64,000 nt of DNA from Bispira polyomma. Taxonomy: Eukaryota. The notes under the pieces are model-generated. The model was not told where the DNA came from, ran no database searches, and was given only the letters and a program-made list of their open reading frames with translations. Position 1 is the first letter of the stretch; every line of letters starts with the position of its first letter. The DNA lies in NCBI GenBank assembly GCA_965649765.1, contig OZ287751.1, positions 62,496,001 to 62,560,000 of the forward strand. Reading direction: 5' to 3'. Below are positions 10,432 through 58,220 of this stretch, piece after piece. Position numbers and translations under genes: made by a program.

Positions 10432-10660
10432 ATGTCCTCGGGGAATCATTGCCAGGGGATTGGGACGGAGGAAACTCTGGTCCATGATCAGGATACACCA
10501 TTGATGTCAGGTGACAAGACTCCGGCCAGCCAGAGCTGTGTCCAGATGGAGTTTCCAGAGAGTGAGGGATCGAATATTAAAGTGGATATTCCGGATAAGC
10601 CGGAGAGCGATGGATCTTCATCAACTCAGAGTACAGAGGAGGAAGAAAGTGGAGAAGAAG
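10432..10660 (+). CDS. Cav3: Predicted coding exon 1 of T-type Ca2+ channel (acidic N-terminus)
   Basis: ATG at 10432 opens MSSGNH...STEEEESGEE. Donor AAG|GTGAGG at 10660/10661 is phase 1 (229 nt), matching the phase-1 acceptor at 12693 and giving ...EEEESGEEG-HSDLPYPGY, the acidic stretch expected before the LPYP motif of Cav3. Confidence 0.75.
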
Positions 10661-10680
10661 GTGAGGAAGAATTTGTGGTT

Positions 10681-11469
10681 AGAACCTCAGTTATCTGAAC
10701 TATGTTGACTAAACAGTTTATATACAGTAGAACCTCGGTTATCTCAAATATGTTGACTGAACAGTTTATATTCAGTAGAACCTCGGTTATCTCAAATATG
10801 TTGACTGAACAGTTTATATTCAGTAGAACCTCGGTTATCTCAAATATGTTGACTGAACAGTTTATATTCAGTAGAACCTCGGTTATCTCAAATATGTTGA
10901 CTGAACAGTTTATATTCAGTAGAACCTTGGTTATCTCAAATATGTTGACTGAACAGTTTATATACAGTAGAACCTCGGTTATCTCAAATATGTTGACTGA
11001 ACAGTTTATATACAGTAGAACCTCGGTTATCTGAACTCCATTGACTGAACAGTTTATATACAGTAGAACCTCAGTTATGTGAACTACATTGACTGAACAG
11101 TTTATATACAGTAGAGCCTCAGTTATCTGAACTCCATTGACTGAACAGTTTATATACAGTAGAACCTCAGTTATCTGAACTCCATTGACTGAACAGTTTA
11201 TATACAGTAGAGCCTCAGTTATCTGGACTATGTTGACTGGACAGTTTATATACAGTAGGACCTCAGTTATCTGAACTACATTGACTGAACAGTTTATATA
11301 CAGTAGAACCTCAGTTATCTGGACTATGTTGACTGGACAGTTTATATACAGTACAACCTCAGTTATCTGGACTATGTTGACTGGACAGTTTATATACAGT
11401 ACAACCTCGGTTATCTGAACTTTGTTGACTAGACAGTTTATATACAGAAGAACCTCAGTTATCTGAACT
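10681..11469 (+). repeat. 48-bp minisatellite, about 16 copies, in the Cav3 intron
   Basis: Unit agaacctc(g/a)gttatct(caaatatg/gaactcca)ttgactgaacagtttatat(a/t)cagt; appears as a 16-aa periodicity in ORF 10702-11034. Confidence 0.97.
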
Positions 11470-12693
11470 TGTCCTGTTTCCTGAACTGTCTATATAATGA
11501 ACAAAATACCAGTCTCTTTCATAATCATATCTTTTACCTAGTGTTGGCAGGCCAATGTCTGTGTACCAATAAACGCCCACCCTGATTAGAAAAAGTGGAT
11601 ATCTTTTTTTAGGAATATCTATTTCAAACATACTTTTGGTAATGCAAATATAATAATGTTATAACTGTTTATAAACTAATTTAGTTGTTAAAGTTCTATT
11701 TGCTTTTCTGTTTTATTGACTTTGTTTTATCAGAACAAAAAATTAGTGTGTGGATACAATGAGGTTCTGTGACGGAATTAAAATCCCTTAATTGTAATAA
11801 ACTAATGTTTCTAAAGTTGTCTCTATTTTCAAAAAATATAATTAATTTTTCCATCTTTTATTGATCAAACTGACAACTATGTTTTACAATATCATACAGT
11901 AAATAAATGGGTTACAATTAAGAATAGAGCTAAATCTTTTGTGGTAACACATAGAGTAAAAATAATGTACAACCCAGTACTGAATCACACCTGTTAAAGT
12001 AGAAATCTCTTTAGTCAATTTCCATTTTATGTGGAGAAATACAAGTATTTTCACAATGGCCATTACCATTAAAATCTACAATGTTTATTGGAAATCCTGC
12101 TTAAGTAGAGATTTCTCCTGCTAGACTCCTGGTCTCTTGAGATGTGACTTCTAGGGCTTCAACTGTGTGATATTTCTTTTTGTTATGTGCACAGGCTTGT
12201 TGAGCAGATTAATAGATAGTATAGCTGTATCACACCTTTTGTCCCTACTGTCTTTTAGCTTTTCAACATAGAAAGAGGTGGCAATAAAATGACTCTACAT
12301 TCATAAAAGGGGAGATTGTTTTACCCCTTACTTGGGTTTTAAACTGTGATTTTAAAGTTCGCTGTACAGTCCACAATATCTAGAAAGCAGTGGTTATCTC
12401 AACCACTTTGAGTAGAACCTCCAAGAAACATGAAATGGAAATTGACAGAATAGAGTTCTACTTATAGGGGTAGAATAAAAAACTTAAAAGTATGTTTGCC
12501 TATAGATAAACTTTTGTTATAACTTCAGGGAATAATTTTCTTGTATTTTTTTTTGTATTTTTGAGTTTCTTTTTCTTTTTCTTTTAGTAACAAGAAAGCT
12601 TACAGGTAAAACGTCATACTGGTTGTTGAATATGGCATGTATTTCATGTGTTAGATTTCACGTTTTTACTACACCATCCCTTTTTACTTCCAG

Positions 12694-15600
12694 GACATTC
12701 TGACCTGCCGTACCCAGGTTACGTTGCTGTGGCTTTCCGTTTCTTCAAGCAGGACTCGCGACCTCGCTGTTGGTGTCTGAAGATTATCTCGTGTCCCTGG
12801 TTTGAGCGTGTCAGCATGAGCGTGATCTTACTGAACTGTGTTACCTTGGGCATGTATCAGCCTTGTGAGGATGAAGTCTGCGAAACCACCAGGTGCAAAG
12901 TCCTCGAAGGATTCGATCACTTCATCTTCACCTTCTTTGCACTCGAAATGATTATAAAGGTGCTCGCCATGGGACTCTATGGAAAGTATGCCTACTTAGC
13001 AGAAACCTGGAATAGATTAGACATGTTTATTGTGTTAGCTGGTGCATTTGAATACATGTTAAATACTGACAACCTCCGGCTGTCTGCAATTCGAACGATC
13101 CGCGTGCTGCGCCCACTACGGGCAATCAACCGGATCCCCAGCATGAGGATTCTGGTGATGTTATTGCTGGATACTCTACCTATGCTCGGCAATGTCTTGC
13201 TTCTGTGTTTCTTTGTGTTCTTTGTCTTTGGAATAATTGGTGTACAACTCTGGGCGGGGTTGCTGCGACAACGCTGTTTCTTCAATCTGCCAGAGAATGT
13301 TACTATTCCTCCAGAAGCCAATATTACAGATTACTATTTCACCGACAGAGATAAGGATTACATCTGTACTACACCTGGCGATGGAGGTATGTCGTTTTGT
13401 CATTCTGAGGCACACCCACTCCCCCACTACAAGTACCGAGATCTGGATATGGGGCGATGCAATGAATCAGCTCAGCCGTTTTCTAGTAATTTAGCTACAA
13501 ATTCATCCTGCGTCAATTGGAATCAGTACTACACAGATTGCAGGGCAAAAGCACCAAATCCATTCCAAGGGGCCATTTCATTTGATAACATTGGTTTGGC
13601 ATGGGTGGCTATATTCCAGGTAATTAGTTTAGCAGGGTGGGTAAATATAATGTATCACATACAAGATGCCCACTCCTTTTGGGATTTTCTTTACTTTGTG
13701 AGTCTTATTGTGATCGGTGCATTCTTCATGATTAACCTATGCCTGGTTGTCATAGCAACACAGTTTTCAGAAACAAAGAAACGAGAGACAGAAAGAATGG
13801 TTCAAGAGAGGAAGCGGTTCTATTCCAGTAGTACCCTTGCCAGTGTATCTGAACCCGGTGGCTGTTACGATGAGATTGTAAAGTATATATCCCACCTATG
13901 CAGGCGCTTCAAGCGTAAGTTTAATCGCCACTTTAGAAATGCTCAAGGCCGACGACAACAAAAAGTGACTCCGGAAAAGGGGATATCATTGAGTCGAAAG
14001 AAGAGGAAAAAACTTCAGACTGTACATTTGCATCATCACCATCACTTTCATCATCACCATTATCACATTAGTAACAGTGTCAACACTGATGCAGTCAAAC
14101 TGCAGGCACCCAGAGCCAGTCCAGATCCCTCAGATATCGATCCCATGCCGTCACCTCTCAGACCAAGTGTTCTCATTATTCCACACTCAGAGATTCAGTA
14201 TGACCTCTCACGAGACTCCTTACAACATGCAAACCAGAACCAAACTCTTCAGCCGATAAATTCTGTGATAGCAAACACCCGGCACTGTGCTCACTGTGAC
14301 ACACACACTGAGCCCAATTCTCAAGTCAGCAAGCATCCGGCTTCATGTAAATGTCCCAGAGAAGCCTTTAGTGAGAACTACATCTGTTCTACGAATCGTC
14401 TGACTAGGGCATCATCCTTAAATCATAGGCGCAGTTCGGATAGCTACCGTCGACGGAGGAAGATGAGCGAGGGACATGTTCATTGTCACGAGGAGAGAGA
14501 GCAAACCAATTATGTAATGCTAGAACTATTAAAATGTCAGAACAGGAAACCAATGGTCCTTACAACACAGGTACCGCAAATACAAGAAGCTTCCGTGATT
14601 AATGAACAAATCAATTTGTTATCATCTGTGGACAGTAATAAGATCCATGAAAAGCCCAAACCTCCCAACTCTTCTAGTAAGCAAAACAGCATTATGTGTG
14701 CAGTACATAATTTAGAATTACACAATTGCAATGACCAACCACCCCATGAAAATAATAACCAGGTGAATGGAGATGAATTATACTCTCATTCCAATTGTGC
14801 ATTGCATGATGTTGAAGCTCGTGCACACCATCATTGCGTAAGCAAGTGTCACTCACACTGTTCTGAATATGAATATTCAGCTTCTGACGATAATTCCGAC
14901 GATTCGACTGATTACGAGACTGTAAAGCAAAAGCAGAAGCCGAATTGCTGGAATAAATTTCAACACGGTTTGAAGAGACTGGTAGATAGTAACTACTTCA
15001 CTAGAGGCATTCTAGGAGCAATCGTCATTAATACTTTAAGTATGGGAATTGAACACCACAATCAACCTGATAAACTGACATTGGTGCTGGAATATAGTAA
15101 TCTGTTTTTTAGTCTCCTCTTTGCCTTAGAGATGTTGCTCAAGTTGGTAAGTGAGGGAATTTTGGGATATATTAAAAATGGATTCAATGTGTTAGATGGG
15201 GTCATTGTAATATTGGGTGTTGTTGAGTTGTTCCAAGGAGGCACAAGTGGCTTAAGTGTACTGAGGACATTCCGTTTGCTAAGAATTCTGAAACTTGTGA
15301 GGTTCTTACCCGCCTTACGGTATCAACTGGTTATCATGCTTAGAACAATGGACAATGTAGCAACCTTTTTTGCACTTTTAGTGCTCTTCATCTTTATATT
15401 CAGTGTTTTGGGAATGCATTTATTTGGTGGTAAGTTTACCACTCATCCGGTCACAGGAAATAGGTGTACATGCCAAGAAATTAAGAACGAAACCATCGCT
15501 TGCAAAACAGAGCGTAAAAACTTTGACAGTTTACTTTGGTCTCTAGTTACAGTGTTCCAAATCCTGACACAAGAAGATTGGAATGAAGTCTTGTATAACG

Positions 15601-18587
15601 GAATGGCTAAAACCTCAGCCTGGGCCGCACTCTATTTCATTGCACTAATGACCTTTGGAAATTATGTGCTTTTCAACTTACTAGTTGCTATTCTAGTGGA
15701 AGGGTTTTCAACTGAAGGAGATGAAAAAAAATCAAAAGATGGTGACGCCAGTGGTAAAGATAATAAATCAAGGAAAGCTTTAAAAGGGAGTACAAGAAAG
15801 ACACCAAAGAACAAGAATATAAACAAACTAGCTGAAGAAAGAGACTGTTTAATTAAAAAATGCAACTGTCATTTGAAATATCATCCCAAAGAACCATATC
15901 TGTGCTCAGTTAATAGTGTTAATGATGTTAAGAATAACAAGGAGAAAGAGAGAAAGCTATTGGGCATTGTCACTACCCCACCACCACCTTGTCATGAAAG
16001 GGAGGTAATGAGTGCAACCTGCAGTCTAGAACCTTTAAATCCTCCATTAATAACGCATACAGCAGCAACCCCTATGCCAACACCACAGGGCTCGTCCAGT
16101 GAGATCTATGGTACTCCATATCAGGATCCACAGAACTTTTTGACTGTAGAATTCCCATATGAAAGAGATGTGTTGTCTGTAGAAAGGCCAAGAGGGTCAC
16201 GAAACAATCTGTTGTCTCCTCACTTCAGCTTTAAAGACAGTAGAAGTTCATGGTTTGGTCAGACCTTACCTAACACTGACGATCACTTGCCAAATGGAGA
16301 CAGCGAGTTTGGTACGAGTTTGAAAGTAGAAACCAGCTTCCAACAAGGCACACCATTAAATAACCAGCGAGTAATACGCCAGCAGTCATTTGGTAGGTCT
16401 GACCAGAGTCTGCATCCTAATTCATACAGCTGTAGCTCCTCTAAATCTAATATCAATCTTAGCAGAGCTTGCAGTCAGTCCAGGTCCATCACCCTGAGTC
16501 GTGAAAATAGTTTGAAATCTGAGCGGAGTACCCTGAGCCCTCAGAACTCTTTTGGCTCTACACCCCATGAGGAATACAAACAGAACAACCTGGCTGAACC
16601 TCCAGAGTCAAACGGCGATGAAAATACAGAATCCGAGGATGATATTCAGTGCAGATATACATGGTGTCCAGAACCAGTAGGTTGCTGTTTGAATCGAATA
16701 GACTACGCACTCTTTGCACTGTCTCCGGAAAATAGGATCCGTAAACTCTGCCAGAATCTTATTCGTAAGAAGAGTTTTGATTACACAGTGTTATTATTTA
16801 TCGCACTCAACTGTATAACCCTAGCCATGGAAAGACCTGACATACCGGATTACAGCACAGAGAGGAAGTTCCTTTCTATATCCAATTACATCTTCACCAC
16901 AGCATTTACCTTGGAAATGACTGTAAAGGTGATAGCCCAAGGCTTTGTCGTAGGTAAAGGTACATACCTTAGGAGTGGATGGAACGTTATGGACGGTTTT
17001 CTCGTGTTTATTTCTCTACTTGATTTGACCATCTCCTTGACTGCCTCAACCAGTCCCAGAATCTTTGGCATCCTGCGTGTGTTCAGACTTCTAAGAACTC
17101 TAAAGCCGTTGAGGGTAATAAGCAGAGCACCAGGTTTGAAGCTAGTGGTCCAAACACTTTTGTCATCTTTGAGACCTATTGGAAACATAGTTCTCATCTG
17201 TTGTACATTCTTTATTATATTTGGTATTTTGGGAGTGCAGTTATTCAAAGGGAAGTTCTACTATTGCGATGGCACAAACATAGTGGGAGTACTTAACAAA
17301 ACAGACTGCTTAAACAAAGGGCCCCCTTACAGGTGGGTTAACCGGAAGTACAACTTTGACGACCTTGGCCAGGCGCTCATGTCCCTGTTTGTGCTGGCCT
17401 CAAAAGATGGTTGGGTGAGCATTATGTATACAGGACTGGATGCAGTTGACGTGGATATGCAACCACAGGTGAACTACAGCGAATGGCGACTTCTCTATTT
17501 CATATCATTCTTGCTCTTAGTTGGATTTTTTGTGCTCAATATGTTCGTGGGTGTGGTGGTGGAAAACTTCCATAAATGTCGTGAAAGTCAGGAAAAAGAA
17601 GAACGAGCCAGACGAGCAGCCAAGCGGGCTAAGAAGATGGAGCGGAAAAGGAGACATAAAGGCCAGCCTCCTTACTGGGCTGAATACAGCTGGATCCGTA
17701 AATTTATCCACACCGTCACAAGTAGCAAGTACTTTGATCTCGCTATAGCAGGGGTTATAGGGCTGAACGTGATCACAATGGCTCTGGAGTACTACATGAT
17801 GCCCAAGGAGTTGATGTTTGCCCTGAAGATCTTTAACTATTTCTTCACATCCGTTTTCATTCTGGAGGCGGCAGTGAAGATGATAGCCCTGGGGTTTGTC
17901 CGGTATATGAAAGACAGGTGGAATCAGCTGGACGTGATCATCGCCATTCTGTCCATTGTGGGCATCGTCCTGGAGGAGATGAAATCCGGAGTCATTCCTA
18001 TCAATCCCACTATCATTAGAGTGATGAGGGTGTTAAGGATAGCCAGGGTATTGAAACTCTTGAAAATGGCAAAAGGGATACGAGCATTGTTGGACACGGT
18101 CATCCAAGCGTTACCTCAGGTGGGTAACCTGGGTCTGTTGTTTTTCCTGTTGTTTTTTATTTTTGCCGCTCTCGGTGTGGAACTCTTCGGTCGCTTAGAA
18201 TGCTCCGACTTACACCCGTGTGAGGGCCTCAGTAAACATGCTCACTTCAGAAACTTTGGCATTGCTTTCTTGACGCTCTTCCGCGTAGCTACGGGTGATA
18301 ACTGGAATGGGATCATGAAGGACACTTTGCGGGAGGACTGTGATAACGACGTGAACTGTATCCAGAATTGCTGCGTTAGCCCCATCATTTCTCCCATGTT
18401 CTTTGTGGTATTTGTACTGATGGCCCAGTTTGTACTGGTCAATGTGGTAGTGGCGGTATTAATGAAGCACCTAGAGGACTCACACAAGCAGATTCACGAT
18501 GACGCTGATTTAGAAATCGAATTGCAAAACGACTCGGACGAAAGCAATAACTGTGAAGAGGAGCAGAATACACCGAGGGGGGATTAA
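12694..18587 (+). CDS. Cav3: Voltage-gated T-type calcium channel alpha-1 subunit (Cav3, CACNA1G/H/I family); single 5.9 kb exon encoding domains I-IV
   Basis: Uninterrupted ORF with four S4 sensors (IRTIRVLRPLRAINR, LRTFRLLRILKLVR, LRVFRLLRTLKPLRVISR, IRVMRVLRIARVLKLLK) and four pore loops (SLAGW, TQEDW, SKDGW, TGDNW). Cav3-specific gating brake PGGCYDEIVKYISHL, poly-His, APRASP and TAATPMPTP motifs are present. Acceptor tttttacttccag| ends at 12693. Confidence 0.97.
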
Positions 18588-21929: not shown

Positions 21930-22095
21930 NNNNNNNNNNNNNNNNNNNNNNNNNNNNNNNNNNNNNNNNNNNNNNNNNNNNNNNNNNNNNNNNNNNNNNN
22001 NNNNNNNNNNNNNNNNNNNNNNNNNNNNNNNNNNNNNNNNNNNNNNNNNNNNNNNNNNNNNNNNNNNNNNNNNNNNNNNNNNNNNNNNNNNNNNN
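21930..22095. other. Assembly gap
   Basis: Run of 166 N. Confidence 1.
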
Positions 22096-34500: not shown

Positions 34501-36975
34501 TGATTATGGACAGAACAGTAAATAAAGGCTAAATTGATAGTGCAGGTGAACCAGTTGGTAGTTATATGTGGCAAACTAATTGTAAAACAATCTTTACACA
34601 TTTAGCAATCTTATTTACTTAAGCTAACATCTCATTGTTGGTTTTACTGCCAAAACCCAGCAAATGAGATTAGTATCAGATCCTAACCAGTTGTACAGTC
34701 GCGATTTATCTATTGCAAAACTAGAAAGTGAATGTTGGTTTTACACATCACTTTCAACATCTTTGGTCATTGGTGTGGCGGTCAGATTTGTTGGTCTAGA
34801 AAAAGAGTACTGGAAATCACCAACCTGCAAACAAGTACCTGGCCATCTTTCCCACAAGAAAGAAGCTTTGTGATTCCACCCTACTGTCTTGAGAGGATGG
34901 TGACATTAAATCATCAGATGCTTATAACTACTAGGCCACTGCAACACCATACAAAACTGGAATGTAGACATGTAGACTAGACAGTTACATTCTTCTTTCC
35001 ATTAATGCGAAACATGTGTTTTTTTCAATTATTGGTATCACACTCTTAGTATGTATACTTGGACATTTATTGTTGATTCCTCACAAACAGGCAATTTAAA
35101 CCCTAATAATTACTTTTTAATATACAGCTATTTGACAAAGATTGGTATTGCAGCCTATGTAAGACATTCAGAGATTGCACATGGCACACCCTCAGTTGTA
35201 TGATCAAGATCCAATGTTTTTTTTTCTTCTCCATTTATCATGTTAGGAAAAAAACACCTGTTTAAACCTAGGCAATAATGAGCCTTTTAAAATAAATGGG
35301 TATGACCTTTTTTTATAAACATGTTAGCTTCTTCGTAAATGGTGGGGAAACTAATTTTTATTGCTTTCCCCTAAAAAAAGAAAATAACAAAATGCAGATT
35401 TGTTTCTGTGTCTGTGTGTGATTAAATTAGTTATATAATCGCAGAGACATGTTCAATAGACTTGTCTCAGATCTCAAGGGAATTCTCTGATCCATTCACA
35501 TTTTGCAGACGGAATCATGCCATAGACTCCTATCTGTTTAAGTCCAGACACCGGCCTTGTTTTTATCCAGAACACAGATCAGAGATGACCTGACCATAAC
35601 TTCCAACACGGACCATTCAATCCATCCCCAAAATAGTTCTGTTACTTGCATTCATTCGTAAGTCTACATAAAGTCTTTACTCAAAACAGATATATATATA
35701 TTACTATTACAATACACATATATAGTTTGTTTTAAATATGTATTTTATATATATTATATCGTGTAATCATTTCTACATAAATGACTCTTTAGTAGTGTAT
35801 GTCTGTGCATACAGCATAACCTGAGATGCCAAAAAGGTTGGTTTTGCTGCTATATTAAAGGTTTATGTCACTTAAGCTGAATATCTCGTGACAAACTCTA
35901 CCATTATGCTGAGCTTTTTTCTGCCATTGACGTAATCTGGGTTTCTGGGGCCTATTTGATACATGGGAAGTAGTAAGGTCTTATAATATTGCTTACAGTA
36001 GGTTTTGTCTCAATACACTTTGCTGTTTTATTTCATTACTGATTTCTTAGATGACTGCATCCTCCTTTACACCTGAACTCAGAAATTAGTTGTTGCAATT
36101 ATTTTACTTCAGACATAGACAACTAGCAACATGTTTTGTGAAAAGCTCATTTCAAAGTGCTAATCACATAATAAGCAAAAAAAAGTTTGGTTATTTTTAT
36201 TTACCTAATGATATTTTTGAGCTGAAATAGACTCTACATAGATCCTAATCAGAATGAGAGGTTGCCAACAGTTACAGTCGTTGAACAAAGCCCTAAAACA
36301 CTGACTTGTTCAGTTTTTTGCTATTGCTTTTCTCTCCCCTACGGAAGGTTCCTATCAAAGCTTTCCTTTATATACTGAAAAGGCTGCAAACTTCAGTATC
36401 AATTATTTTATAATGGGATCATACAAAATATATCATTTATTTTGTTCCTACATTCTAGAATATAGGAACTTTAGAATAATATCAAAAATACAAATTATGA
36501 TTTTTTCTTCGTCTATTATTTTATAAGAGATTATGCAGTTTACAGATTAAATTAATTACACTCTGTGTTAACCATGCAAATTAGTTAAACTCAAAGGTTT
36601 GGTATTTTCAGTAAACTATCACAATTCACATTAACTATCATTTATTATATTAAATACAAGTATGATTAATAAAAGGGTTTTAGGAATCTTGGCCATGGCA
36701 TATATGTGGGAGAGTGGGCAGTAGACTAACTGAAAACCGGTGGTTTGTAAAGCAAGAAAATCCCAGACAAACTACCTTGCTCTGATCTCATCCACCAGTG
36801 AAACTGTTCATAGTGATAAGACACAAGACATGTTGAAAGCAACGTTTAACCCAAAATACATAGATATAAGGGGTGCCAGGATCATAGTCCGGCAACGGTA
36901 TCTTGCAATGGTTTGTTTTCTATTTGTTAGACAAGGTACCAGTCTATTAAAATTGGCGATATTCTATCTCACTTA

Positions 36976-37960
36976 GAAATGCTTAAATTTGGTGTGCTGC
37001 AAGGGACTGTGCTTGGACCACTCCTATTTTCATTATACACTACACCCCTTAGCCAAATTATTTCCTCCTATTCTTCTCTGAAGTATCACTTCTATGCCTA
37101 TGATACACAGATCTACGCGCACCTTACTCCAAGCACATCAATCGGTGCCCTGGAAGTCCTTCAGAAATGTTTAGCAGGTGTTCAAAATTGTATGGCGCTT
37201 AATAAGCTCAAACTGAATCCGGATAAAACCAAATTCAAATTTTTTGGCTTGCGCACTCAACATGCTGAACTGTCAAATTATTTTCCAGTAAACATTCTGA
37301 AGACACTGTTATCCCCAACTGGTAAAGCGAGGAGCTTGGGAGTTTTGTTTGATATTGATCTTTTCCTTTTCCAGTCATATCTAATCAGTGTGTAAGTCAT
37401 GCTTCATGGGTCTTAGAGACTTTAGGAGAATCAGGAGGTACTTTCTAAAAGCGGTTGAAATAACTGCAGCAATGGTAGGCAGCAAACTGGATTAGTGCAA
37501 TTCATTATTTTGCAGTTTGACTAAAAAGGATCTAAACAAATTACAATGCATCCAGATCCAGAATTCATCGGCACATCTGGTCAGTTGTTCTGCTCAGCTT
37601 TCACATGCCTTATCGATTCTAAAGTCACTCCACTGGTTCGTAGTAGGTATTGGTGTGCTTTTAAAACTGCCACAATAGTATATTGTGTCAATCAAGTTTC
37701 TTGATTCGGGTTTGTCTAAATACTTAAAACCACACTTGTGTTACTATATAAATACCAGGCGAGCTGCTCCCAAAAATAGATTACTTCTTGTTCCACAATA
37801 TAAGTCCAAAGTACACAGGTCAAAGGTTCACTTTGATAAAAGTTTTGCAAATTGAATAGTTATTGAATGGTTTACCTCAACACATTAGGATAGTTCCGTC
37901 CCTGTATTTCTTCCGGTGCAGTTTAAAGACCTATCTGTTCAATGATGCATTCCGAATATA
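36976..37960 (+). mobile_element. L2/CR1-clade LINE, 5'-truncated RT pseudogene
   Basis: [27 protein letters not shown] (decayed YADD), [15 protein letters not shown]; frameshifted continuation ending in LKTYLF. Confidence 0.88.
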
Positions 37961-55530: not shown

Positions 55531-56170
55531 GGTAAATGATTACTATGTTTTTTTGGGGTGCACTCAACCATTGCTAGAATTTGAGTGCGATTTCCTAATT
55601 AGTTTCTTGTTGGAAATGTAAATGTTCAAGGGATGTCAGGTTTCTTGGATATCCACAAATACTTCACAACAGTTACTGGCCAAGGACATTCAGTCCAGAA
55701 AAACCCAACAAACAGAATTTTTAATAGTAGGTTATAAGATATTATTATACATAAGATTGTTACATATCCTTCTGTTTTATTAGTTTCCTCATTTGTATGA
55801 CATTTTCAATGCTGCCCACTAACCCCAATTAGTTACCATTGGACATTACCTTCTGGTCAGTATTGGCAGAACATTTTACATTTTAGTATTCACCTTTTTT
55901 GGCATCACACAAGGTTAAACGAATGAACATCTTCAATTTAGCAGTTTTAAATAAATTAACGCCTATTTTAGCGGTAAGTGGCAACTACATATATGGTTGA
56001 ATTATATCTTTTCATTTGTAACTTCATTTTATGATGTTTGCACAAATTTTCGGGGGTGCCGACAGTGTCATTTGTTTACTTTGTACAAAAGTTAGCGATA
56101 ATCGCATACAGTTGTTTAATATATTTGTTATAAGCAATGACTATTTACCGTTCTCGTGAAAACATTCATA

Positions 56171-58220
56171 TTGATATTAAAGGCATAACAATAGGAAACC
56201 AAACAATTAAACTTACACAATTTGCAGATGACACCACCTTAATACTAGATGGTAGTAGACGTTCTTTGCAGGCAGCTTTGAATACAATAGAGATATTTGG
56301 AAATTTATCTGGGCTAAGAATGAATAAAGAAAAGACAAAAGTTATTTGGATTGGCAGTAAAAAGCTTTCCAAATATAAGTTAAATGTTTCATTAGAACTA
56401 CACTGGGGAGATCATGATTTTTCACTTCTGGGATTAGAACTTTCAACCAATTTAAATAATATCCCATCTATAAATTATGATAAGGTGTTTGAAAAAGTAA
56501 AAAATATTCTCAAGTCGTGGAAGTACAGGATACTAACCCCCATTGGAAAAATAACTGTGATCAAAACACTGATCCTATCAAAATTTAATCATCTCTTTTT
56601 AACAATCCCTGTACCTAAAAGTACCCTTGAAGACTTAAATAAGCTTTTATACCACTATTTATGGGATGGAAAACCAGATAAAATTAATAGGAAGACCATA
56701 TGTAAAAGTTACTCAGAAGGAGGGTTAAAAATGATTGATGTCTTCCAATTTGAAAAATCACTAAAAGTTAGCTGGCTGAGAAACATTATCTCTGAGAAGC
56801 CAAAATTATGGTATACACTTCTTCATGACACTATTGGAGAATTTAAAAACCTATGTATTCTAGGGGGTGAATGGTGCTTCACTTTTTTACACAAATTAAA
56901 CCCATTTTGGAAAGCGGTATTTACACACTGGATAGAAACATGTAGAGTAAAAAAAATCCACTCAAATAATGACATCATGCATAGTTGTATCTGGTTTAAC
57001 AAGAACATCTCCAGCAACAAACTTTATTTTTCAAACTGGTCTAAAAGAGGCATTAACACAATTGGGGATCTTTTAGATTCAAATGGTCAAATGATAAGTC
57101 TAGAAGATCTAAAACTTAGGTATAAGTTAAACATTAACTTTCAAAATTACCTTACAGTGAAGCAACTCATTAGTCTATATATAAATAGTAACAAAAAAGG
57201 GGATAACTGGAAAATGGTACGACCATATATTCCTTTCCACATATCATTATTAATCAGCTGTACAAAAGGTAACAAAGATGTATATGATGTATTGTATCAT
57301 TCTGAAACGTACAATAGAAAGAACCAGTTAAAATGGAATCAAGAACTTAACATTAGAAGTGAAAAAGAGATGTGGAAATCAATATATAATGCGTGCTTCT
57401 ATTCAATATTAGATAATTCATATATATGGACTCAATTTAAAATTATACACAGAATAATTGGCACTAAAGAATATATGCACAAATTAAAAATATCAAATTC
57501 AGATTTGTGTAGAATTTGTGGAGAAAACAGTGAAAGTATTTTACATATTTTTTCAGAGTGTTCTGTTGTTAAAGAATTGTGGAATAATGTCAAATCTTGA
57601 ATTGAATTGAAAATAGATGTGAATCTAGAACTGAATCAGGCCACTCTTATATTGAGATACTGGTACCGAGATAAAATATAATGGCCTTTAAATTTTGTTT
57701 TAATAATAACTAGGCAATACATATTTACATGTGCCAAAAATAACCACAATTTAAATATATATTGATTACAAAAGATAATAAAGGATAAGTATCTAGAACA
57801 AGAATATGTATCTATAACAAACCACTCATTTGATTTTTTCAAAAAGAAATGGTCAATTTGGAAAAATATAGTTTTAGATATCTAAATCATAACAAACACA
57901 ATCCAAGATTTAACAATTAACAAATAACCTATTAAAATCTACAATAATGTATTTTGTAAAGTCAAAGTAATTAACCCATTTTTTTAGACAATATAAGAGA
58001 GGTTTATGTTATCCTTATTTGGATTTATGTAACTCATGAGCAGCTAATTATTGGTTCTTTTTTTAAAAATGTTCAGAAGAAACGTCTTATAAATGTAACA
58101 ATGCATGTCATATTTACAGTAACCGTAGCAACATTATTATTTATAGCACATTATTGTACTGCACTGCATCTGTACTGTAATATATTAAAGGAACTAAATG
58201 TTTTTTGGGGGAAAAAAACA
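56171..58220 (+). mobile_element. L1/Tx1-clade LINE, 5'-truncated, with 12-bp TSD
   Basis: QFADDTT RT motif, GKITVIKTLILSK, GGLKMID, zinc knuckle CRIC...HIFSEC; A-rich tail; TSD aaaacattcata at 56159-56170 and 58221-58232; premature stops from 57598. Confidence 0.93.

What the first reader, a model, noticed from the sequence alone, without database searches (positions are those of the whole stretch)
13590..13660. T-type channel with a non-canonical A-E-D-D selectivity filter
Seen: the four filter positions are Ala (GCA 13632-13634, FQVISL-A-GW), Glu (15573-15575, TQ-E-DW), Asp (17406-17408, SK-D-GW) and Asp (18297-18299, TG-D-NW). Known: Cav3 channels carry EEDD, and neutralising filter carboxylates lowers Ca2+ affinity and favours monovalent permeation (compare Nav2 DEEA, Nav1 DEKA, NALCN EEKE). 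Inference: with intact S4 sensors and gating brake, this could be a low-voltage-activated Na+-preferring or non-selective cation channel built on the Cav3 scaffold. Caveat: GCA is one base from GAA, so a consensus error or private variant is possible. A-to-I editing cannot restore Glu.
Basis: partly seen in the sequence, partly recalled or inferred. Interest (0 to 1): 0.92.

Follow-up and report, generated by a model that had tools for sequence, protein, structure and literature searches.

The report
Worm calcium channel with altered filter
A fan worm's only T-type calcium channel gene has alanine in place of one of the four pore acids that published reviews call invariant, and other worms keep both versions on twin swappable exons, so these animals probably have an undescribed way to let more sodium through this channel.

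Summary
The gene is the genome's only detectable Cav3 (T-type) channel, with filter A-E-D-D in one 5.9-kb coding exon. Three DNA runs match at the codon. An orthologue from another assembly keeps Ala at dS about 1.5 (dN/dS 0.04), and the Owenia model also reads AEDD.

The alanine comes from an unannotated alternative exon. Capitella and six other contigs carry tandem 93-nt domain I pore exons, Glu (GWVD) then Ala (GWVN), 45-113 nt apart. The nemertean Tubulanus has Gly then Glu. Eighteen intron-containing contigs hold only the Ala exon. This genome, probably a sabellid fan worm, fixed the Ala form in a nearly intron-free gene, probably through a cDNA.

Reviews state that Cav3 is always EEDD, and I found no paper on AEDD or GEDD. 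The likely effect is weaker Ca2+ binding and a larger Na+ share at low voltage (about 60%). It is untested, and no RNA was available.

The parts
10432..10660 (+). Candidate first coding exon: ATG, 76 codons ending in an acidic run, phase-1 GT donor at 10661
   Evidence: Donor phase matches the acceptor at 12693, and the acidic run resembles the Capitella N-terminus before LPYPG. Not found in the 10 kb upstream of the orthologue L005; no RNA. Inferred.
10661..12693 (+). The only detected intron (2033 nt), holding a 48-nt tandem array at 10680-11469; pyrimidine tract and CAG acceptor
   Evidence: The orthologue L005 has an acceptor at the same codon position, and DNA similarity starts there.
12694..18587 (+). 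Single 5.9-kb coding exon with all four channel repeats; stop TAA at 18585-18587, only about 45 residues after IVS6
   Evidence: dN/dS 0.04 against L005, whose stop falls at the same codon.
13083..13133 (+). Domain I S4 voltage sensor, intact
   Evidence: identical to Capitella, Owenia and molluscs.
13620..13712 (+). The 93 nt that equal the Ala-type alternative pore exon of other annelids, here fused exactly to both neighbouring exons
   Evidence: boundaries from AG/GT-flanked exons in L133, L038, L057, L086, L136, L137, L138.
13632..13634 (+). Domain I filter residue Ala (GCA) in place of Glu
13644..13646 (+). Asn at filter +4; the Glu-type exon has Asp here, so the Ala form lacks two domain I carboxylates
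   Evidence: Molluscs also have Asn at +4 with Glu at the filter.
13848..13907 (+). Start of the gating-brake helix in the I-II linker
   Evidence: Aligned to human Cav3.1; coordinates.
15255..15302 (+). Domain II S4, intact
15432..15527 (+). Domain II turret: homologue of Capitella exon 12b with the first and last of five Cys replaced by Thr; Lys at 15516-15518, 20 residues before the beacon Asp
   Evidence: The spacing equals K1067/D1087 of snail LCav3-12a (PMC9694082), but human Cav3.1 has the same Lys.
15573..15578 (+). Domain II filter Glu and beacon Asp, both retained
17067..17126 (+). Domain III S4 (one Arg to Lys, shared with the orthologue and Helobdella)
17406..17408 (+). Domain III filter Asp
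18009..18065 (+). Domain IV S4, intact
18297..18299 (+). Domain IV filter Asp
18324..18374 (+). Domain IV L6 loop with four Cys, the invertebrate two-disulfide type reported as needed for high Na+ permeation
   Evidence: PMC9694082.

Best explanation
This is the working, single Cav3 orthologue of an annelid (probably a sabelline fan worm), with an AEDD filter. Shown: an annelid ancestor duplicated the 93-nt exon coding the domain I filter and P2 helix; the downstream copy carries Ala at the filter and Asn at +4, and several lineages keep both copies. Inferred: the two copies are spliced either/or, giving EEDD or AEDD channels from one gene, as NALCN does with EEEE/EKEE. Shown: in this lineage the gene has one giant coding exon holding only the Ala form, with no second Cav3 found. 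Inferred: a reverse-transcribed AEDD mRNA replaced or outlived the intron-rich parent. Inferred function: the three-carboxylate ring binds Ca2+ less tightly, so Ca2+ blocks Na+ entry less and the low-threshold current is a mixed cation current with a larger Na+ share than the EEDD form. It would depolarise near rest with less Ca2+ load. I put the genomic history at about 0.9 and the functional step at about 0.65.
For: Orthology: best solved relatives Cav3.1-3.3 at 1728-1804 bits against at most 578 for other channels; groups with Capitella Cav3 at 99%. Conservation: dS 1.5, dN 0.06 against L005 with Ala kept; Owenia AEDD; all four Ala codons among 50 distinct Ala-type exon sequences. Exon pair: AG/93 nt/GT tandem Glu-then-Ala exons in Capitella L133, L038, L057, L086, L136, L137, L138, and Gly-then-Glu in Tubulanus L135. 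In five of these loci both flanking exons are on the contig. Single Cav3 in this genome. The exact fusion of the Ala exon to both neighbours implies an Ala-spliced mRNA once existed. Function: single Ala substitutions in the Cav1.2 EEEE ring weaken Ca2+ block about 10-50-fold (PMC2233694). Invertebrate Cav3 already pass much Na+ and switch selectivity on small charge changes near the filter (PMC4436565, PMC9694082). The turret Lys and the two-disulfide IV L6 loop linked to Na+ permeation are present.
Against: No electrophysiology and no RNA run. The beacon Asp of domain II is intact. A block constant of tens of micromolar would still be saturated in sea-water Ca2+ (own knowledge, about 10 mM). 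The turret Lys is also in Ca2+-selective human Cav3.1. Three of the seven annelid-type pairs are not frame-protected differently from the rest: four pairs (L038, L057, L136/L138, L137) would stay in frame if both exons were included, so exclusivity is inferred. The metagenome pattern could only return Ala exons, so it cannot count Glu-only paralogues. The structure model was unreliable at the pore.
Confidence: 0.6

Rival explanations
1. The AEDD channel is real and used, but it remains mainly a Ca2+-carrying T-type channel in sea water. The Ala/Asn exon tunes kinetics, conductance, or block by protons, Mg2+, heavy metals or toxins rather than the Na+/Ca2+ ratio.
For: Beacon Asp kept. Single Ala changes shift Ca2+ block only 10-50-fold in Cav1.2. 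Changing the domain I Glu of Cav3.1 to Asp alters activation, inactivation and recovery and lowers current density (bioRxiv 10.1101/626069). It is this genome's only Cav3, so it may have to supply T-type Ca2+ entry.
Against: Two carboxylates are lost at once. A small neutral residue arose at the same site in annelids (Ala) and a nemertean (Gly), and other known filter-exon pairs swap the selectivity residue (PMC3557258).
Confidence: 0.28
2. The Ala form conducts poorly and serves as a voltage sensor, scaffold or brake on T-type current; fan worms have in effect given up T-type conduction.
For: Domain I filter mutants of Cav3.1 lose current density. The C-terminal tail is cut to about 45 residues.
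Against: The pore helices and the other three filter residues are under strong purifying selection (dN/dS 0.02-0.04). Several Ala-only paralogues are kept within single metagenomes. Even the AAAA Cav1.2 mutant conducts monovalent ions.
Confidence: 0.08
3. Assembly error, private allele or processed pseudogene.
For: GCA is one base from GAA; the gene lacks introns; no RNA evidence.
Against: 0 differences in three DNA runs; same codon in an orthologue at dS 1.5 with an open frame and dN/dS 0.04; Ala exon in Capitella, Owenia and about 85 other contigs.
Confidence: 0.02

Closest known systems
Cav3 T-type channels (human Cav3.1-3.3; snail LCav3)
   Same: Four-repeat architecture, S4 sensors, gating brake, Glu-Asp-Asp in domains II-IV, beacon Asp, no IQ motif; orthologous by score and tree.
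   Different: Domain I filter Ala instead of Glu; reviews say EEDD is present in all known Cav3 (PMC4436565, PMC10120453). Nearly intron-free gene, very short C-terminal tail.
NALCN alternative filter exons 15a/15b and 31a/31b (PMC3557258)
   Same: Tandem duplicated pore exon, Glu copy upstream in annelids, second copy changes the filter residue, and one copy is lost in some lineages.
   Different: Different channel family and domain (Cav3 domain I); the change is to a neutral residue (Ala or Gly), not Lys; the channel is voltage-gated rather than leak.
Lymnaea LCav3 exon 12a/12b switch and cnidarian Cav3 with beacon Asn (PMC9694082, PMC10120453)
   Same: Natural Na+-permeable T-type variants made by splicing or gene duplication.
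   Different: Those leave the EEDD ring intact and act on the domain II turret or beacon; here the ring itself changes. Capitella has only exon 12b (PMC4436565; one turret exon seen), so the domain I pair may be the annelid substitute switch.
Nav2 (DEEA filter)
   Same: Three acids plus Ala, no Lys; described as non-selective for Na+ and Ca2+ (PMC10120453).
   Different: Ala is in domain IV, there is no beacon Asp, and the lineage is separate; this genome has its own Nav2-like gene (L011).

Membership tests
Cav3 (T-type) alpha1 subunit | Four Ion_trans repeats in one chain | tested here: met
   Pfam PF00520, 4 stretches.
Cav3 (T-type) alpha1 subunit | Orthology to Cav3 rather than Cav1/2, Nav or NALCN | tested here: met
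   PDB scores 1728-1804 bits against at most 578; tree with Capitella Cav3, 99% SH-like (that tree holds Cav3 rows only).
Cav3 (T-type) alpha1 subunit | EEDD filter ring | tested here: not met
   AEDD. It is a Cav3 orthologue by descent but not a canonical EEDD channel.
Cav3 (T-type) alpha1 subunit | Beacon Asp after the domain II Glu | tested here: met
   15576-15578.
Cav3 (T-type) alpha1 subunit | Gating brake in the proximal I-II linker; no C-terminal IQ motif | tested here: met
   Alignment to Cav3.1; tail of about 45 residues with no IQ motif by inspection.
Cav3 (T-type) alpha1 subunit | Low-voltage activation, transient current, Ca2+ permeation | not testable with these tools
   Needs patch clamp.
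Mutually exclusive selectivity-filter exons (NALCN type) | Tandem homologous exons of equal length and phase with canonical splice sites, differing at the filter residue | tested here: met
   Met in relatives L133, L038, L057, L086, L136, L137, L138, L135.
Mutually exclusive selectivity-filter exons (NALCN type) | Both copies present in this genome's gene | tested here: not met
   Only the Ala form; no Glu exon elsewhere.
Mutually exclusive selectivity-filter exons (NALCN type) | Each copy seen alone in mRNA | not testable with these tools
   No RNA run held. Indirect only: Capitella and Tubulanus models use Glu, the Owenia model uses Ala.
Functional retrogene / cDNA-mediated intron loss | Precise loss of ancestral introns | tested here: met
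   About 20 exon blocks over 34 kb in Capitella are one exon here, fused in register.
Functional retrogene / cDNA-mediated intron loss | Intron-containing parent gene elsewhere in the genome | tested here: not met
   None found; in-place replacement or parent loss cannot be told apart.
Functional retrogene / cDNA-mediated intron loss | Poly(A) remnant or target-site duplication | tested here: inconclusive
   None seen by eye after the stop; the event is old (dS 1.5).
Nav2 (DEEA) | Nav orthology, gap at the beacon position, Ala in domain IV | tested here: not met

The most novel reading that the evidence does not exclude
Annelids and, independently, nemerteans evolved a splice switch in the Cav3 selectivity ring itself (EEDD to AEDD or GEDD) that turns the T-type channel into a low-threshold Na+-dominated channel. 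Several lineages then fixed the neutral form, and this fan worm has no conventional T-type Ca2+ channel left.
Probability: 0.35. Interest if true: 0.92.

Novelty: new variant of a known kind. Interest (0 to 1): 0.85.

Why it matters
The EEDD ring is described as invariant from choanoflagellates to humans, and that invariance has been used to argue that T-type selectivity is tuned only outside the ring. A natural, conserved EEDD/AEDD (and EEDD/GEDD) exon pair breaks that rule. It gives two isoforms of one gene that differ by a few residues, a ready-made test of what the domain I glutamate does for selectivity, block and gating. It would be a third route to Na+-permeable T-type channels, after the turret exon and the beacon change. 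It also shows that genome annotations of Capitella and Tubulanus miss a pore isoform. An almost intron-free four-repeat channel gene that froze one splice form is unusual in itself.

Tried and rejected
Error or private allele: rejected. A hidden EEDD paralogue in this genome: protein and pattern searches found only Cav1, Cav2, Nav1, Nav2, NALCN and one-repeat channels. The five look-alike ITLENW hits on C5 and two others are non-coding chance matches. Doubled Glu pore segments in arthropod and fish models (P0002, P0094, P0158, P0159) are identical or near-identical repeats and look like model artefacts. Both Helobdella Cav3 genes have only a Glu exon. The AlphaFold model of domains I-II had pLDDT under 50 at both pore loops, so it was not used and no fold search was run. 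The 93-nt exon tree is poorly resolved: it groups the two Tubulanus exons together (90) but does not prove one origin for annelid Ala exons. Mollusc genomic loci could not be fetched. The Owenia locus came back withheld and was not pursued. Sample accessions of the unnamed contigs were not found in papers. The first tree run timed out. Paper searches for AEDD or GEDD with Cav3 or selectivity filter returned nothing. The N run at 21930-22095 was left alone. The spliced model was examined exon by exon; the joined exon 1 + exon 2 protein was not built or searched.

Full report
Observation. They lie in one open frame of 1985 codons, 12630-18587. Pfam finds four ion-transport repeats. The best solved relatives are human Cav3.1, 3.2 and 3.3 (1728-1804 bits; next family 578), and the Ala aligns on the domain I Glu. 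S4 segments, gating brake and the domain II beacon Asp are intact.

It is not an error. Contigs of three DNA runs cover 12083-15800 with no differing letter at depths 13-77. These are probably the assembly's own data, so the stronger evidence is comparative. An ENA contig (L005, P0001) encodes an 89% identical, equally intron-free orthologue with GCA at the same codon. Between the two, dS is 1.5, dN 0.06 and dN/dS 0.04, and 0.024 in the pore segment. The Owenia fusiformis model is also AEDD. Of 157 long homologues, 146 are EEDD and 2 AEDD; the other 9 are incomplete but have Glu in domain I.

The organism. The assembly's mitochondrial contig has annelid gene blocks, with cox1-3 and nad3 on one strand and eight protein genes with positive GC skew on the other. 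That matches the type III pattern described within Sabellinae fan worms (PMC13602327). The channel groups with Capitella Cav3. The family assignment is an inference from the mitogenome.

Where the alanine comes from. A DNA pattern for the Ala motif hit 98 metagenome contigs, most of them Cav3 exons. Three carry two copies of the pore exon in tandem. I then fetched annotated genomes through their Glu-type proteins, which avoids the pattern's bias. Capitella teleta has a Glu exon and, 73 nt downstream, an unannotated Ala exon, between single flanking exons. The nemertean Tubulanus polymorphus has a Gly exon followed 65 nt later by the annotated Glu exon. A profile-free search gave three more unnamed loci with the Glu-then-Ala pair. 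All copies are 93 nt, flanked by AG and GT, and the introns between them are 45-113 nt. The Ala copy has Asn where the Glu copy has Asp four residues on, so it removes two acids. Eighteen contigs have both flanking exons and only the Ala exon, 17 with Asn and one with Lys at +4. Single metagenomes hold three or four distinct Ala exons, 67-78 of 93 nt alike. I recall those sample series as gutless marine oligochaetes, but that is from memory and untested, and the scan could not see Glu-only paralogues. All four Ala codons occur. Both leech (Helobdella) Cav3 genes have only Glu. Either/or splicing is inferred from the layout, the short introns and the fact that two pore segments would not fit the fold. 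Four of the pairs would stay in frame if both exons were kept, so RNA is needed.

This gene. Searches with domain I, domain III and N-terminal segments and three DNA patterns found no second Cav3 in the genome; the other hits are Cav1, Cav2, Nav1, Nav2, NALCN and one-repeat channels. These searches are lower bounds. Where Capitella has about 20 exon blocks over 34 kb, this gene has one 5.9-kb exon with the Ala segment fused exactly to both neighbours. One intron remains at the 5' end, with its acceptor at 12693 conserved in L005. The tail ends about 45 residues after IVS6 in both orthologues, against 460-630 in Owenia, Tubulanus and scallop. The simplest account is that a cDNA of an Ala-spliced mRNA replaced the gene or survived its parent. 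The domain II turret is the Capitella exon-12b type but has lost its outer Cys pair. It carries Lys 20 residues before the beacon Asp, the spacing of the Na+-switch Lys in snail LCav3-12a (PMC9694082), although human Cav3.1 has that Lys too. I examined the spliced model exon by exon and left the joined protein out.

How it probably works. Ca2+ selectivity rests on tight Ca2+ binding in the carboxylate ring, which blocks Na+. Single Ala substitutions in Cav1.2 weaken that block about 10-50-fold (PMC2233694). Invertebrate Cav3 channels are only weakly selective to begin with and flip towards Na+ on small charge changes (PMC4436565, PMC9694082). I therefore expect a low-threshold mixed cation current with a larger Na+ share (0.6). 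The main rival (0.28) is a channel that still carries mostly Ca2+ but gates or is blocked differently: the beacon Asp is kept, and a Glu-to-Asp change at this site in Cav3.1 alters kinetics and current density (bioRxiv 10.1101/626069). A poorly conducting regulator (0.08) and an artefact (0.02) are unlikely. The structure prediction was too weak at the pore to help.

Comparison and novelty. Two reviews state that every known Cav3 has EEDD (PMC4436565; PMC10120453). Searches for AEDD or GEDD with Cav3 or selectivity filter gave no paper, and a search for annelid Cav3 mutually exclusive pore exons returned only the NALCN and exon-12 papers. The library lacks most subscription papers. The arrangement works like NALCN's exon 15a/15b filter switch (PMC3557258) but in another family and domain and with a neutral residue. 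The protein is a Cav3 by descent and fails the EEDD criterion. I class it as a new variant of a known kind. It is surprising to a channel specialist and directly testable, but function and splicing are unmeasured. Interest 0.85.

Noticed in passing
L135:40181-40431 (Tubulanus polymorphus Cav3): Tandem domain I pore exons in the order Gly then Glu, both with Asp at +4; probably an independent duplication giving a GEDD channel. The Gly exon is not in the protein model.
   Followed up: partly
L133:18667-18759 (Capitella teleta Cav3): Unannotated Ala-type pore exon with canonical splice sites, 73 nt after the annotated Glu exon.
   Followed up: yes
L036, L068, L093; L082, L090, L105, L124: Three or four diverged Ala-only Cav3 pore exons within one metagenome, suggesting an expanded AEDD paralogue family (or pooled animals).
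   Followed up: partly
L122:5107-5199: Ala-only pore exon with Lys at filter +4, adding a positive charge to the outer vestibule; organism unknown.
   Followed up: no
window 18470-18587: C-terminal tail only about 45 residues after IVS6 in this gene and its orthologue, against several hundred in other Cav3.
   Followed up: partly
window 15432-15527: Exon-12b-type turret that has lost its first and fifth Cys together and has Lys at the exon-12a switch position.
   Followed up: partly
L031/L032 (mitochondrial contig C75): 15.5-kb mitogenome with genes on both strands, two trnM calls, and the GC-skew pattern described as Sabellinae type III.
   Followed up: partly
L014 and L016 (G000:C2 near 10.39 Mb): Two near-identical copies of the Nav1 domain IV/C-terminal exon about 2.2 kb apart, differing just after the filter (GWH versus GWN), a site linked to tetrodotoxin sensitivity in my recollection.
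   Followed up: no
P0011-P0157 mollusc proteins: Mollusc and rotifer Cav3 have Ser rather than Gly after the domain I Glu and Asn at +4; their genomic loci could not be checked for a second exon.
   Followed up: no
window 10680-11469: 48-nt tandem array, 16.5 copies, inside the channel's only intron; high-copy elsewhere in the genome by read depth.
   Followed up: no
window 56134-57597 and 36931-37392: Reverse-transcriptase fragments of non-LTR retroelements.
   Followed up: no
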